From contig NW_027266266.1 in assembly GCF_022045235.1 (NCBI RefSeq), forward strand, positions 23,994,001-24,058,000: a DNA stretch of 64,000 nt. The letters run 5' to 3'. Under the pieces are notes generated by a model. The model was not told where the DNA came from. It did no database searches and was given only the letters and a program-made list of their open reading frames with translations. Made by a program: the position numbers and the translations under genes. Position 1 is the first letter of the stretch; every line of letters begins with the position of its first letter. Origin of the DNA: Haliotis cracherodii. Lineage: Eukaryota. This document shows positions 10,080 to 16,250 of this stretch, in pieces.

Positions 10080-10085
10080 TATAAA
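10080..10085 (+). promoter_or_regulatory. Candidate TATA box of the secreted-protein gene
   Basis: TATAAA about 50 nt upstream of the ATG at 10135. Confidence 0.55.
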
Positions 10086-10134
10086 GATGCTGCTGATGAT
10101 GCCATGACCACAGACTTCATCAAGTGGATGCAGA

Positions 10135-10213
10135 ATGGCGCAACGAGACATCCCTACCCTGCTGGTGGTCCTGGCCATGTTCCTGTTGACGTCAAATCAC
10201 CACGTGCTTGGAA
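10135..10213 (+). CDS. Exon 1 (signal peptide) of an unrecognised 142-aa secreted protein
   Basis: ATG in strong context (AGAATGG); MAQRDIPTLLVVLAMFLLTSNHHVLG has a hydrophobic core and a small-residue cleavage site; consensus donor A|GTAAGT at 10214, phase 1. Confidence 0.8.
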
Positions 10214-10244
10214 GTAAGTCCAATTCATTCAGCTCATTTATTAT

Positions 10245-10730
10245 GGGGTGCAGTCGTCAACGACGCCCCAAATTCGCTGTTCAGAGTTGCGTCCCTTGGG
10301 CACGCCTGAAACCTACGGTCATGGGTTCGAATCGAATTGTTTCTAGGTTTGTCATACCATACCCATGCTCGTGGGTTTCACCAAAGCGGTAAACGTCTTA
10401 TACCTACATCAGGAATGTTCTGGGATTCAAACCCACGGCCACTGGTACTGGCAACGCTAAGGGTACAAACTCTGCACAGCGATCACATTAAGGCTTAACA
10501 TCACGGAGACACAGATAGCTCAGTCGTCTAAGGCACCACAATTTCAATGTATAAAGTTACCCCCTTTAGGCGTGCCAGAAACCTAAAGTCGTTGGTTCGA
10601 ATCTGACTTCAAAATTATGCTCCTAGGCTTTTACCAAAGTGGTAAACGTATCATATCTGAATCACTTCGGGATTTCCTCCGACGTTAAGCAGACACGCCG
10701 TGATATAGTTGGAATAGTGTTCAAGTGTTC
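10245..10730 (+). mobile_element. Cluster of degraded SINE B copies at the start of the intron
   Basis: CAGTCGTC...CAGAGTTGCGTCCCTTGGGCACGCC.GAAACCTA...GGGTTCGAATC...GGTAAACGTC, twice plus an inverted head fragment. Confidence 0.7.
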
Positions 10731-10984
10731 AGATGACAGGAGCCGCTGCAGCATTCGACTTATCCCATTAATCCATTATGATGACGTCACATTTTTATTG
10801 GTGCAATTGATTCTGAGCCAGGAATTCACTGGTCTTTCTGAACCAAATTTAAACAATCAAACTGCCGATGTAGGTCATTATGCAAAATTATAGAAATCTT
10901 ATGGTTTCAGTCGGAGAAACCACTCCAATCTGATGATTCCCGAAGTAGAATCAACGATTCTCATGATTTCCCCATCACAGAAAG

Positions 10985-11244
10985 TGTGTTTGTTTGTTTG
11001 TTGTTTAACGCCACCCTCAGCAATATTCCGGCTATATGAAGGCGGTCTGTAAATAATAGAGTGTGGACCAGACAATCCAGTGATTGACATGAGCATCGAT
11101 CCACGCCATTGGGATATGATGACTTGCATCAACCAAGTCAGCGAGTCTGACCACCCAATCCCGTTAGTCGCCTCTTATGACAAGCATAGTCGCCTTATAA
11201 AATTACGGCAATGGGTTCTATTGTACCCCGGATCTTCACGGGTA
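10985..11244 (-). mobile_element. SINE family A
   Basis: Reverse complement of the family A consensus, from the GTTT tail to CCCCGGATCTTCACGGGT. Confidence 0.85.
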
Positions 11245-11273
11245 CCATTATGACATGACACGAGTGGTCACGA

Positions 11274-12448: not shown

Positions 12449-12718
12449 CATACGCATTTCATTTAAAAAAATAGCCCTAGATAAATAATTATAGATCATT
12501 TCCATTTAGAATCGCATGCCTTTGAAATTGCATGTAAACAAAATGTCTAGACGAATACGGACCTAGTGCTCTACTATGTGGTTTTAGATAGAAAATGATG
12601 AGGAGATATCTGAAATATTTGAAAAAGTAAGCTAACGATAACGAAGCAATGCTGATGAGGTGGTGATACCATCCAATCTCATTAAAATCAGATCTAGGTT
12701 CTCGCTGCCGCTAAACAA

Positions 12719-15205
12719 AGATCTGAGGACATCCCATTACGGGTCACGTCTGAATGACCTTTCGCAAACTTTGACCGACCACTGAAATGACTAACAAGAA
12801 GTCGACATCAGCCAATTAGAAGGCAGCTTTCTCGAGCTTTACGGCACTCGTTTCAACCTGGCGACTTCCATTTCAGACTACGCTTGAAAAATGAGTTGAC
12901 ACAGTTCTCGAATAAAATTTTGAAAACTGAACAAACGAACATTCCGAAATGTCTAATATATGGCTGCAATTGTACGACAGTGCTTCCCACGTTCTGTGCA
13001 ACGCCTCCTCCGTTTAATTGTTTATCCTACGGAAGCGAGCGTTTTCGAGGTTGTATGATTAGAAAACACATTCCGACTGTCACTTTCGTGATCTGGTAAA
13101 CGCCGCTTTGATTGGTCGGAGTCACCACATCTTCCCGAGGCAAAGGAGTTAACTGACTACAAAAGTCCATTTCCACCCTTGCCGAACTAGGCTGGTATTA
13201 TGGAGTTATGTTTTGTCTGGACTAACGAGTCTATGCATAGTCCAATCAAAATCGCGCACCGAAATCAAAATCCGTTTCGTAAACTGTCGTGCAGATTTCG
13301 ATCGATTGCAGGGTTTGCAAAGCATGAGCATCGCCAATTTGTTGTCAGCAGATATGTTCCAAATCCTTTCATGTTTTTAATCAAGGTGCTCACTTGATTT
13401 GATGCATTTTGCTATGTAAGACCCGTTTTATCACAATATAGATCTTGATTATCGATCAGATCGTCCTGATTGGGCGCCACCATTTTGTGAGAAGCAAACG
13501 CAAGTGATACGACAGGTGGAATCTGATTGGTCCATAGAAGAGGCTAAGAAGGGACATAATTGGTAATAGCCACTGATGGCGCAACGATCGAGCCCAGGAA
13601 TTCCAGCCTAGTTCGGCAAGGGTGGAAACTGGACTTTTAAAGTCAGTTAACTCCCTTGCCTCGTGAAGATGGAGTCACCAGAACGGCGGTAGCTGCTGGC
13701 CGAGGTAGGCGTAGTCGCGACGGCAAATCAGAGTCAGTTCCAATATCGGGGGCCCCGCCTTTAGCTATAAAAACGGTTCCAGGTAAAATATAATGGCCCT
13801 GTTCAAATATAATGTCGAGCAAACTTTCTAACACGTTTGGTTTCCATGGTCCTGTCTAAAAAACCTACCGCAATTGAAAAATGTGGGTTCCGTTGTTTTT
13901 TTATCTGTTTCTAAAAAGGGGTTCACCTCCATCATATCCCTGTGTTTACTCCGACATGACGACAGCGGTGGGCAACAAAATTGGCGCCCGTAAAATCCTC
14001 TCGCTTCGACTGTAAATAACGAACTGCACATCCGTGGATCATTTTTGGTTCGTGAACTTATAAAATAAATACGATAAAAAAACCTCGTTCCTTCCGGTTT
14101 GGGGAATTAAAGACAATAGCGTTGTGCCAAAAGTCTGCAATTGGCTTGCATTTCCCCAAACATTCAGCGATGCTATATTTAGCTCTTGTACACGTCAGGA
14201 GTGATGCTGCTCTGTGTTAACGTGATGCAAATGCTGTATTCATACGCACCTTGCTCACGTTATAAGGACGCATGGCGTAATTTAGTTCATAATTGATTTA
14301 ACGGTTTCTATTTCATATAATGTTTATGTTCCCCGTGAAATACGTTTTCTTTGACCCTCAGTAGACTTTGGGACAGGTGAAACCTTTTCCACACGGGACA
14401 TTAATTTGTTTTGAAATGGAAAGCTCGTTTACTATCCTTTGAATAACCAGCGTATTATATCTTCTTTCACAGTTTATACTTATTATGATTGAATACTGAT
14501 ATTGAACACTGGACAACGAGGGTATGTTGGCTGCGTGATGCATGGCCTCTACAAGGAGCAATTTGATTATACATACAAATATTTAAGTTATTGTGTTGTG
14601 CTTTCAGATTTTTCGCAATCCTTCCAATCGACAATTTGCCCACGAACGCTGGTCGGCGTCGTAGACATACTACCGGGTACCCTGACTTCAGATTGCGGTG
14701 AGATGCCAGCTTTGGTTTGCCCTGTATACGTGACTACATGTTGTTTTACGCACCTGTCATGAATATTCCAGCCATGAAACGAATAACAGGAATAAGATAT
14801 TAGCCAATGAGAAAGCAGCTCTGTCGAGCTTCACGGTACTAATTTCAAAATGGCGACTTCCATTTCAGACTACGCTTTGTAAATTACTTTGACAAAATTT
14901 CGATTCAAAATTGTAAAACAGAACAAAAGAAAATTTTGATAGATGACCGAAATTGTATGGCAGTACTTCCCATAGACTCTTTCAATTCAAGTTTCAAATG
15001 TTTTCCCTTGGAAGTGTCTATGATTCGGAATCAGTCGTACAGTCCGTAGCTGTCAGTTCGGAAAGCTCCGTGTTCACCTGTCCGAGGTTGCATGATTAGA
15101 AAACACACTCGGACTTTCACTTTCGAGATGTCGTTATGCGACGTTCTGATTGATCGGAGGAAAAGTCGTTCTGACGTGATCTGTAATGGGATGTCCTCAG
15201 ATCTA
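12719..15205. mobile_element. Composite of non-autonomous DNA-transposon pieces, possibly Academ-related
   Basis: ~45-bp inverted repeats AGATCTGAGGACATCCCATTAC... at 12719-12765 and 15157-15204; two direct copies of a ~330-bp segment at 12810-13120 and 14801-15160. Confidence 0.5.
13128..13671. mobile_element. 544-bp non-autonomous DNA transposon, ~70-bp TIRs, 9-bp TSD (MULE or AcademH type)
   Basis: TIR CATCTTCCCGAGGCAAAGGAGTTAACTGACT...GCCGAACTAGGCTGG and its near-complement; perfect TSD GAGTCACCA at 13119-13127 and 13672-13680. Confidence 0.9.
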
Positions 15206-15624
15206 AAATCTGATTTCAAATTTCACTCTGAATCCATTAGGGGAAGGTGTCGTCTTTAGTTTAAAATACACAGACCCGGGAAAAGGCTTTTCAATTTTTA
15301 TTTGTTAGATTACAAATTTGTTCTCCAAAAATTTGGTCGTTGGTTAAAGCTAAAATACATATCAAGAACACACATTATTTTCTGTTTTGTGAAGATGTGA
15401 AAGGGGTTCGAATTAACATAATTGTCCACAGTTGCGTGTAAGTCGCTTTTTAGTGCAATGAATTTGCCGCGACGTTACAATTTCACCTAATCTAATGCTA
15501 TGAGCTGGAACAGTCCTGGCTGTTACAAACCACTCACTCAATGACGCTCATAGTGAGTATTTAGACTTGACGAAGTTCTTCCAGATCGTAGACACTAGAA
15601 AGCTTTTTTAAGCGTACACGGCGG

Positions 15625-15851
15625 TGAAGTCGTCCAAGGCCCTGGAATTCGCTTTGCAGAGTTGCGTCCCTTAGACGTGCCAAAAAACTATGACCGTTGG
15701 TTCATATTTCTTGGTTTGTCAGCATCATGAACCGGCTTATTTGTTTCACAAAAGAGATCTGTATGACATTAGGCTCTACCCCACACCGAGCTGACAGTGT
15801 GATATAATTTGTAATACAACGACCTTAAACTAAACTCACTCACTCATTCAC
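15625..15851 (+). mobile_element. Degraded SINE B whose ACTC tail abuts the exon 2 acceptor
   Basis: AGTCGTCCAAGGC...GCAGAGTTGCGTCCCTT...GAGCTGACAGTGTGATATAA...TAAACTCACTCACTCATTCAC. Confidence 0.7.
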
Positions 15852-15857
15852 TTACAG

Positions 15858-16207
15858 GAAGCCGGGGTCATCTGACAGCTCGCTGCGCCCCTTACTGCGG
15901 CAGGCAACGACCCAACGCCACCTACGTCTCCGTCGTCATTGGAAGAAGCTGCGCCAACGTCAAACGTATCGCCATTAACACACCGTCGTTCGCAGATGCT
16001 ACTGGCGTCCAAGCTCCCCCACCTGGTCTTCTGGGAGGATTATGCAAGAGTTACAGGGCGTTCGTAAGCGGCAGGTTCACCATCCCCGGCGCCAACTGTG
16101 ACATCCCGTCATACTTCACCGACGTCACCGCATCCTTGTACGACAGCTGCAATAACAAGGTCGATGACTGTGAAAGTCTTCGCATTATTCAAAGGACAAG
16201 CATTTAA
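15858..16207 (+). CDS. Exon 2 of the unrecognised secreted protein (115 codons plus stop after the split codon, 7 Cys)
   Basis: Acceptor TTACAG at 15852-15857; phase-1 join gives an open frame RSRGHLTARCAPYCGRQRPNATYVSVVIGRSCANVKRIAINTPSFADATGVQAPPPGLLGGLCKSYRAFVSGRFTIPGANCDIPSYFTDVTASLYDSCNNKVDDCESLRIIQRTSI*; GC-rich with many C-ending codons against AT-rich flanks. Confidence 0.8.
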
Positions 16208-16244
16208 CAATGATATTACAGAATTACACGTTCCCGATGTCCAT

Positions 16245-16250
16245 AATAAA
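16245..16250 (+). terminator. Polyadenylation signal AATAAA of the secreted-protein gene
   Basis: Begins 38 nt after the stop codon; T-rich sequence follows. Confidence 0.6.

What the first reader, a model, noticed from the sequence alone, without database searches (positions are those of the whole stretch)
10080..16250. Complete two-exon gene for an unrecognised 142-aa secreted Cys-containing protein, missed by the ORF track
Seen: TATAAA (10080), ATG in strong context (10135), a 26-aa signal-peptide-like exon ending at GTAAGT, a 5.6-kb repeat-filled intron and a TTACAG acceptor. The 350-nt second exon is open in exactly the required phase, and AATAAA starts 38 nt after the stop. The predicted mature chain (RSRGHLTARCAPYCGRQRPNAT...DSCNNKVDDCESLRIIQRTSI) has a basic N-terminal part, 7 Cys, one NAT sequon and an Asp-rich C-terminal patch. 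I recognise no domain. Inference: a lineage-restricted secreted protein; shell matrix, mucus, gamete or defence roles are all possible in a mollusc. The odd Cys could allow a disulfide-linked dimer.
Basis: partly seen in the sequence, partly recalled or inferred. Interest (0 to 1): 0.8.

Follow-up and report, generated by a model that had tools for sequence, protein, structure and literature searches.

The report
Unannotated abalone secreted cysteine-rich gene
The gene is real, but it has three exons rather than two (172 aa, not 142), and it is an unannotated old duplicate of a fast-evolving, abalone-only secreted protein that databases list only as "uncharacterized".

Summary
The gene model is incomplete, though. 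The "5.6-kb intron" holds a 90-nt, frame-neutral middle exon (14608-14697), so the product is 172 aa (79+90+350 nt) with 9 Cys in the mature chain.

Three lines of evidence support this:
- **Tandem paralog.** A copy lies 17 kb upstream, just outside the window. It is RefSeq XP_071093273.1, "uncharacterized protein", Haliotis cracherodii. It has the same three exons, the same phase-1 introns and all 9 Cys.
- **RNA-like contigs.** Contigs from two runs leave the genome exactly at 15857, which fits an upstream exon ending in G (14697) and not exon 1, which ends in A. Three such runs cover the middle-exon bin but not the unique intron bins beside it.
- **Coding signature.** Exon GC is 0.51-0.56 against 0.42 in the background. 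Between the paralogs pN is 0.39 and pS is 0.69.

A HMMER profile search of 1.84 billion proteins found only Haliotis relatives. A follow-up search added one more. There is one annotated gene in each of four species, and all belong to the upstream lineage. The window's own lineage is annotated nowhere. No Pfam, PDB or fold match was found, and AlphaFold models were poor. The annotated lineage diverges quickly (89% identity between black and red abalone, about 50% to H. rubra and H. asinina). Function is untested. My best guess is an extracellular, disulfide-stabilised, beta-rich binding protein. Interest is modest.

The parts
10080..10085 (+). TATAAA, putative TATA box 55 nt upstream of the ATG
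   Evidence: Read directly. The paralog has ATATATAG at a similar distance (about 55-62 nt) from its ATG. The transcription start was not mapped.
10135..10213 (+). Coding part of exon 1: 26 codons plus 1 nt (MAQRDIPTLLVVLAMFLLTSNHHVLG), signal-peptide-like; donor GTAAGT at 10214
   Evidence: Hydrophobic core IPTLLVVLAMFLL with an 11-residue Kyte-Doolittle mean up to 3.0, and V-L-G at positions -3 to -1. The paralog's exon 1 is 42% identical, with the same MAQ start, LG end and phase 1.
10214..14607 (+). Intron 1 (4394 nt), largely interspersed repeats
   Evidence: GT..AG ends. Multi-copy depth in most bins of DNA run X9. No RNA-like coverage in the unique bins 11490-12089 and 13690-14489, apart from a trace in the mildly repeated bin 13890-14089.
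14608..14697 (+).
   Evidence: Acceptor ttgtgctttcAG and donor G|GTGAGA. Translation. It aligns with the middle exon of XP_071093273.1 and relatives, sharing ICPRT and SDC. RNA-like runs X1, X3 and X6 have depth in the single-copy bin 14490-14689 equal to about 82-134 nt at the depth of their exon-3 contigs. GC is 0.51 against 0.40-0.42 in the introns.
14698..15857 (+). Intron 2 (1160 nt)
   Evidence: GTGAGA...TTACAG. DNA run X9 runs colinear through 15649-16089, whereas RNA-like contigs stop at 15857.
15858..16207 (+). Coding part of exon 3 (350 nt including stop TAA at 16205-16207): 115-aa beta-rich domain with 7 Cys and the CAPYCG motif
   Evidence: 39% identity to the paralog with all 7 Cys aligned. 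Contigs X1 (579 nt) and X3 (282 nt) lie on it without gaps. GC is 0.557, with third-position GC 0.63.
16245..16250 (+). AATAAA polyadenylation signal
   Evidence: Read directly. The X1 contig extends about 197 nt past 16089, to about 16286, consistent with an mRNA end near here (inferred).

Best explanation
Window 10080-16270 (+) holds an intact, transcribed three-exon gene of the black abalone (Haliotis cracherodii). It encodes a 172-aa precursor. Exon 1 gives a 26-aa signal peptide. A 90-nt middle exon gives a variable N-terminal segment with 2 Cys. The last exon gives a 115-aa beta-rich domain with 7 Cys. The gene is the unannotated, old tandem duplicate of a gene 17 kb upstream, which RefSeq lists as an 'uncharacterized protein'. 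The family is known only from Haliotis and has no detectable domain.

Shown: the gene structure, the paralogy, the restriction to Haliotis in the libraries searched, the fast divergence of the annotated lineage, and RNA-like contigs that break at the exon 3 boundary and cover the exon 2 bin.

Inferred: the protein enters the secretory pathway and is cleaved after Gly26. It folds into a disulfide-stabilised beta-sandwich-like module in which Cys, Gly, Pro and aromatic residues are conserved and the rest varies. It acts outside the cell as a binding or recognition protein in a fast co-evolving interaction. Defence or pathogen recognition is slightly more likely than a mantle/shell or gamete role.

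My confidence is about 0.85 for the gene model and about 0.4 for 'extracellular binder'. No specific role reaches 0.3.
For: Gene model:
- The sequence features are all in place.
- Only two copies of the last exon exist in the genome, 17 kb apart on the same strand.
- The paralog's exons 1, 2 and 3 match in order, phase (1, 1) and boundary sequence: cagAATGGCGCAAC at the start, AG|AT and GATTG(C/T)G|GT at the middle exon.
- The paralog is XP_071093273.1 on a 49,011,830-bp contig, the length of the window's contig.
- All three window exon peptides align colinearly with four annotated 181-187-aa Haliotis proteins, with every Cys of the window aligned.

Transcription:
- Runs X1, X3 and X6 (75-90 Mb of contigs) have essentially no depth in unique intron bins, while DNA run X9 has 7-17x there.
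- Contigs X1 rec 8 and X3 rec 16 match from 15857 onward, with 149 and 164 further letters 5' of that point. That fits exon 2 (90 nt, ending in G) plus part of exon 1.
- All three runs cover part of the single-copy bin 14490-14689.
- Seven RNA-like runs under four organism labels and five studies hold 32-58% of exon 3's 31-mers; an eighth holds 13%.

Constraint: between paralogs pN is 0.39 and pS is 0.69, which is saturated. Exon GC is elevated.

Orphan status:
- The profile search of 1.84 billion representatives gave only P0001 and P0002 plus three low-complexity repeat proteins.
- The word search with a profile added one H. asinina protein.
- There were no Pfam hits and no PDB sequence hits.

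Fast evolution: H. cracherodii and H. rufescens orthologs of the upstream gene are 89% identical. Identity to H. rubra and H. asinina is about 50%.

Beta-rich domain: both AlphaFold runs place 4-7 strands in the last-exon domain, at low confidence.
Against: - The two joints (10213->14608 and 14697->15858) are not among the rows the read tool printed; 1774 joints were not shown. Splicing is therefore inferred from contig ends, contig lengths and bin depths.
- The tool only guesses that X1-X8 are RNA.
- No signal-peptide predictor was available.
- Divergence of exon 3 in the laid contigs (7/233 and 3/118, about 3%) is about the same as intron divergence in X9 (about 3.3%). Present-day constraint on this copy is therefore not shown.
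- The window's lineage is not annotated in any of four RefSeq abalone annotations.
- The fold is unknown (pLDDT 42-45), and nothing here bears on tissue or function.
Confidence: 0.8

Rival explanations
1. The reader's two-exon, 142-aa form (exon 1 joined directly to the last exon) is the main product, and the 14608-14697 stretch is not used.
For: Skipping the 90-nt phase 1-1 exon keeps the frame, so this isoform is possible. The printed joint table neither shows nor excludes it.
Against: Both RNA-like contigs match the genome from 15857 (G). A direct exon 1 join would put A (10213) there. The contigs carry 149 and 164 nt 5' of that point, which under the two-exon model would need a start upstream of the TATA box. 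RNA-like depth exists in the single-copy bin holding the middle exon. All four annotated relatives include the homologous exon with both Cys.
Confidence: 0.06
2. The window copy is a transcribed but no longer constrained duplicate (a young pseudogene in the making), and only the upstream annotated paralog is functional.
For: It is not annotated in four RefSeq abalone annotations. It sits on a long branch in the family tree. Exon 3 divergence in other runs is similar to intron divergence.
Against: The frame is intact across all three exons. Splice sites are canonical. All 9 Cys and the CAPYCG, IPG and YDSC motifs are kept, even though synonymous sites are saturated since the duplication (pS 0.69 against pN 0.39). 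The contigs from other organism labels have no gaps over the 118-233 nt of exon 3 they cover. The window copy is equally distant (38-40%) from all four annotated proteins. If the tree is rooted on its branch, the duplication predates the split of the sampled Haliotis species, which would mean the frame has been kept for a long time.
Confidence: 0.1
3. It is a mantle-secreted shell-matrix protein.
For: It is secreted, novel and fast-evolving, like most of the abalone mantle secretome: about 85% of that secretome is novel proteins, and only 19% have homologues in Lottia (PMC1676022).
Against: The predicted mature chain is mildly basic (14 K+R against 9 D+E), non-repetitive and looks globular. 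It has none of the acidic or low-complexity tracts common in matrix proteins (the typical matrix composition is from my own knowledge). No tissue or proteome data were available, and motif searches of papers gave nothing.
Confidence: 0.2

Closest known systems
RefSeq 'uncharacterized protein' family of Haliotis: XP_071093273.1 (H. cracherodii), XP_046356140.1 / LOC124135030 (H. rufescens), XP_046557459.1 / LOC124266704 (H. rubra) and a 187-aa H. asinina protein (P0007)
   Same: Three exons with phase-1 introns. A signal-peptide exon starting MAQ/MVR and, in all but the H. asinina protein, ending LG. A middle exon with CPR(T/A) (CAR in H. rufescens) and DC. A last-exon domain with CAPYCG, VVI, IPG, (Y/F)D-x-C and all Cys aligned. 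E-values of 1e-17 to 1e-22 for the last exon alone.
   Different: Only 38-40% identical to all four. The middle exon is 5 codons shorter. The copy sits on its own long branch. Its own lineage has no database entry.
Abalone sperm lysin / sp18 (Pfam Egg_lysin)
   Same: Small secreted proteins known only from Haliotis, arisen by duplication and diverging unusually fast between species (from my own knowledge of the lysin literature).
   Different: No sequence similarity and no Pfam hit. Lysin and sp18 are helical and lack disulfides (own knowledge), whereas this family is Cys-rich and predicted beta-rich. Gonad expression was not tested.
Rapidly evolving mantle secretome of Haliotis asinina (Jackson et al. 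2006, PMC1676022)
   Same: The same class: novel, taxonomically restricted secreted proteins of abalone.
   Different: There is no evidence that this gene is expressed in mantle or found in shell. No sequence link to any named mantle gene was found.

Membership tests
Haliotis LOC124135030-like uncharacterized secreted protein family | Significant sequence similarity of the C-terminal domain with all 7 Cys aligned, including CAPYCG | tested here: met
   E = 1.2e-17 for the genome hit. tblastn E = 1e-19 to 1e-21. Alignments.
Haliotis LOC124135030-like uncharacterized secreted protein family | Three coding exons, both introns in phase 1, with the signal peptide confined to exon 1 | tested here: met
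   Window: 79, 90 and 350 nt. Paralog: 85, 105 and 356 nt, by my count from the boundaries seen (tblastn map).
Haliotis LOC124135030-like uncharacterized secreted protein family | Middle exon with two Cys (C-P-R-T ... D-C) | tested here: met
   FSQSFQSTICPRTLVGVVDILPGTLTSDC, aligned.
Any Pfam-A family, including Egg_lysin | Match to a curated profile | tested here: not met
   0 families at E <= 10 for the exon 3 peptide and for three full-length relatives. 0 families at E <= 0.01 for the exon 2 peptide.
Any solved fold (PDB) | Sequence or structure match to a solved chain | tested here: inconclusive
   No sequence hit better than E = 0.18. Foldseek's best hit was E = 0.2, but the models have pLDDT of 42-45, so the fold comparison carries no weight.
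Secreted protein (classical signal peptide) | N-terminal n/h/c regions with a small residue at -1 and -3, confirmed by a predictor or experiment | tested here: inconclusive
   Charged n-region (R4, D5), a 13-residue hydrophobic core and V-L-G before the exon boundary, conserved in relatives. No SignalP was available.

The most novel reading that the evidence does not exclude
The window gene and its upstream neighbour are two ancient lineages of an abalone-only protein family with a new disulfide-rich beta fold. The scaffold is conserved while the surface, and especially the N-terminal segment just after the signal peptide, diversifies under positive selection. On this reading the proteins mediate species-specific recognition of gametes or pathogens, as lysin and VERL do in abalone fertilisation.
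Probability: 0.15. Interest if true: 0.55.

Novelty: new member of a known kind. Interest (0 to 1): 0.3.

Why it matters
The result adds a missing gene to the annotation of a critically endangered species. It also shows that a small orphan family, listed as a single gene per abalone genome, has at least two old lineages in black abalone. Fast-evolving, lineage-restricted secreted proteins are the usual candidates for gamete recognition, immunity (withering syndrome is the main threat to black abalone) and shell building. A correct 172-aa sequence is what is needed to look for the protein in proteomes and expression atlases. Beyond that, this is an ordinary case of an orphan secreted gene, with no functional data.

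Tried and rejected
**Searches that found nothing**
- Pfam on every exon peptide and on three relatives gave nothing.
- The word-index protein search with exon 3 gave nothing, not even the paralog, so its blank is uninformative.
- PDB sequence profiles gave nothing.
- AlphaFold was run on 2-row and 6-row alignments and reached pLDDT 44.6 and 42.3. Foldseek against the PDB then gave only generic beta-sandwich rows at E >= 0.2, which I disregard.
- The ESM Atlas could not read the window's sequence. For the H. rufescens relative it gave no hit above chance level, and its own model is poor.
- Paper searches for the accession numbers and for the CAPYCG motif returned 0 papers.
- The black-abalone ancient-DNA selection paper names outlier islands on scaffolds 7, 12, 14 and 19 and inversions on scaffolds 4 and 9. 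I could not link any of these to the window's contig.

I could therefore not fetch the H. rufescens, H. rubra or H. asinina loci to look for orthologs of the window gene or to compute dN/dS.
- Read laying and the look-up of sequencing runs are capped at one call each, so the unprinted joints could not be re-queried.

**Explanations rejected**
- A transposon-borne ORF is unlikely, because only 2 copies exist and both sit in one unique locus.
- Horizontal transfer is unlikely, because there are no hits outside Haliotis.
- A chance ORF is unlikely, given the conserved paralog, the elevated GC and the RNA contigs.

Each exon peptide was handled separately by reference.
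Full report
**1. What is in the sequence**

- TATAAA sits at 10080.
- The ATG at 10135 is in a strong context (A at -3, G at +4).
- The first coding exon is 79 nt and reads MAQRDIPTLLVVLAMFLLTSNHHVLG plus one base. It ends at 10213 before GTAAGT.
- The acceptor TTACAG ends at 15857.
- An open 350-nt last exon runs from 15858 to 16207, with stop TAA at 16205.
- AATAAA sits at 16245.

Exon GC is 0.557 against 0.42 for the intron and the whole window, and third-position GC is 0.63.

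**2. Paralog and organism**

A six-frame search of the window's own 1.18-Gb assembly with the last-exon peptide found exactly one other copy. It lies 17 kb upstream on the same strand, just outside the window (G000:C3:23992623-23992940). It is 37-39% identical, open, and has all seven Cys aligned. A profile of the two copies found no third.

The paralog's signal exon is L004:1884-1968 (MAQQHVPILVMIAAMVLVAPNRPILGSS plus 1 nt, GTAAGT donor, phase 1). It shares the 14-mer CAGAATGGCGCAAC around the ATG with the window gene.

It returned two real hits, P0001 and P0002, plus three low-complexity repeat proteins.
- P0001 is XP_071093273.1, 'uncharacterized protein [Haliotis cracherodii]', on a contig of 49,011,830 bp. 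That is the length of the window's contig.
- P0006 is its H. rufescens ortholog, XP_046356140.1 (LOC124135030).
- P0002 is XP_046557459.1 of H. rubra.

The genome is therefore the black abalone assembly xgHalCrac1, described as 1.18 Gb in 81 scaffolds (PMC9709981). A later profile word search added one H. asinina protein, P0007, also 'uncharacterized'.

**3. The missing exon**

The annotated relatives are 181-187 aa, not about 145. They carry some 35 residues between the signal peptide and the domain that matches the window's last exon.

In the paralog these residues come from a 105-nt exon (tccAG|AT TCG ... GAT TGT G|GTAAGG) that is phase 1 on both sides. tblastn of P0001 against the window placed the counterpart at about 14613-14700. 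Reading the DNA gives ttgtgctttcAG|AT TTT TCG ... GAT TGC G|GTGAGA at 14608-14697. This is 90 nt, phase 1-1, and encodes (N)FSQSFQSTICPRTLVGVVDILPGTLTSDC(G).

ICPRT occurs only once in all six frames of the 5.6 kb. The three window peptides align colinearly with the four annotated proteins, and every window Cys is matched.

The gene therefore has three coding exons of 79, 90 and 350 nt. That makes 519 nt, or 172 codons plus the stop. If cleavage follows Gly26, the mature chain is 146 aa with 9 Cys. It has 14 K+R against 9 D+E. It carries an N-F-S sequon formed across the first junction and the NAT sequon of exon 3.

**4. Transcript evidence**

Exon 3 plus its 3' end is held (32-58% of sampled 31-mers) by seven runs whose contig totals of 76-98 Mb look like transcriptomes. 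An eighth such run holds 13%. Together they cover four organism labels and five studies. Four runs of about 0.8 Gb, which look like DNA, also hold it. The tool itself only guesses 'RNA?'.

I laid X1, X3, X6 and X9 on 10090-16089. The results were:
- **Intron coverage.** In the unique intron bins (11490-12089, 13690-13889, 14090-14489, 15290-15489), X9 has 1.7-17x depth. X1, X3 and X6 have none there, or only traces.
- **Contig ends.** X9's contig runs colinear through 15649-16089. The X1 contig (579 nt) and the X3 contig (282 nt) match only from 15857 onward, with 149 and 164 more letters on the 5' side.
- **The base at 15857.** It is the G of the acceptor AG. A transcript matches it only if the upstream exon ends in G. 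Exon 2 does (14697). Exon 1 ends in A (10213).
- **Upstream lengths.** 149 and 164 nt equal 89 nt of exon 2 plus 60 or 75 nt of exon 1. Under the two-exon model they would need a start upstream of the TATA box.
- **Middle-exon bin.** Bin 14490-14689 is single-copy in X9 (7.5x). It has depth 2.19, 1.86 and 0.70 in X1, X3 and X6. That equals about 95, 134 and 88 nt at the depths of their exon 3 contigs (4.6, 2.78, 1.59). The expected figure is 82 nt.

There is a limit to this evidence. The joints 10213->14608 and 14697->15858 are not among the 15 rows printed (1774 were not shown), and the tool is capped at one call. Splicing is therefore inferred and not read directly. No gaps occur in the 233 and 118 nt of exon 3 that the contigs cover.

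**5. Constraint and tempo**

Between the two black-abalone paralogs, counted exon by exon (Nei-Gojobori), pS is 0.69, which is saturated, and pN is 0.39. Both copies have therefore been kept as coding sequence for a long time.

The upstream lineage evolves fast.
- Black and red abalone are 89% identical. By my reading of the alignment, about half of the 20 differences fall in the roughly 20 residues after the signal peptide.
- Identity to H. rubra and H. asinina is about 50%.
- H. rubra and H. asinina are 66% identical in the C-terminal domain.

The window copy is equidistant (38-40%) from all four. It joins the unrooted tree on the internal branch. If the root lies on its long branch, the duplication predates the split of these species. 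In that case the window's lineage should exist, unannotated, in other abalone genomes.

In the laid contigs, exon 3 differs from the window by about 3%, similar to the intron in X9 (about 3.3%). The counts are too small, and the letters were not printed, so present-day constraint is open.

**6. What it is like**

Nothing known was found.
- Pfam gave no hits.
- PDB sequences gave no hits.
- The ESM Atlas gave nothing above chance.
- Two AlphaFold runs reached pLDDT 44.6 and 42.3. They suggest only a beta-rich last-exon domain.
- Foldseek's best hit was E = 0.2.
- No paper mentions the accessions or the motif.

The conserved positions are Cys, Gly, Pro and aromatic or aliphatic core residues (CAPYCG, Y-x-x-VVI, IPG, (Y/F)D-x-C), and the rest varies. 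That pattern is typical of a conserved scaffold with a diversifying surface.

My committed reading is a secreted, disulfide-stabilised, beta-rich binding module used in a fast-evolving extracellular interaction. Which interaction (defence, mantle/shell or gametes) is not decided by any result here. The general context is the known abundance of novel, fast-evolving secreted proteins in abalone (PMC1676022).

**7. Verdict**

The finding is a new, unannotated member of an already catalogued but uncharacterised Haliotis-only family. Its main value is a corrected gene model.

**Procedural notes**
- Earlier scan notes on this genome were read. They only agree on the organism and flag a SINE inside intron 1.

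Noticed in passing
G000:C3:23985884-23992967 (L004:1884-8967), about 1-8 kb before the window start: The annotated tandem paralog (XP_071093273.1, 181 aa). It has three exons of 85, 105 and 356 nt (my count from the boundaries), with introns of about 3.4 and 3.2 kb. It is 89% identical to its red-abalone ortholog, and the differences are crowded just after the signal peptide.
   Followed up: yes
window 35457-35861 (+) and 52798-53250 (+): Two exons of a lipoma-HMGIC-fusion-partner-like (LHFPL, tetraspan) gene. Pfam L_HMGIC_fpl hits at E = 9e-12 and 2e-15 cover profile positions 3-118 and 95-171, about 17 kb apart.
   Followed up: partly
window 6015-7858 (-): Broken reverse-transcriptase ORFs of a non-LTR retroelement (RVT_1, E = 2e-9 for 6389-6730), about 2-4 kb upstream of the promoter.
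   Followed up: partly
window 9735-9830: Compound trinucleotide microsatellite (CTA/CTC/CTG runs), about 250-350 nt upstream of the TATA box.
   Followed up: no
window 17633-20646; also 1179-2100, 2172-4338, 25747-26487, 29475-30141, 38809-40536, 45653-46375: Many long minisatellite arrays (periods 19-46 nt, up to 127 copies). The 3-kb array of 24-nt units begins 1.4 kb after the gene's polyA signal. These arrays produce the long spurious ORFs in the ORF list. The 28-nt arrays at 38809 and 45653 share a unit, shifted in register.
   Followed up: no
window 10230-11490 and 12090-13690 (intron 1): Very high-copy interspersed repeats, with contig depth summed to 1e5-2e6 in a DNA run. They are also abundant in the RNA-like runs.
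   Followed up: no
window about 33080-33300 (-) ORF with an X run: A run of N (assembly gap or masked stretch) inside the window.
   Followed up: no
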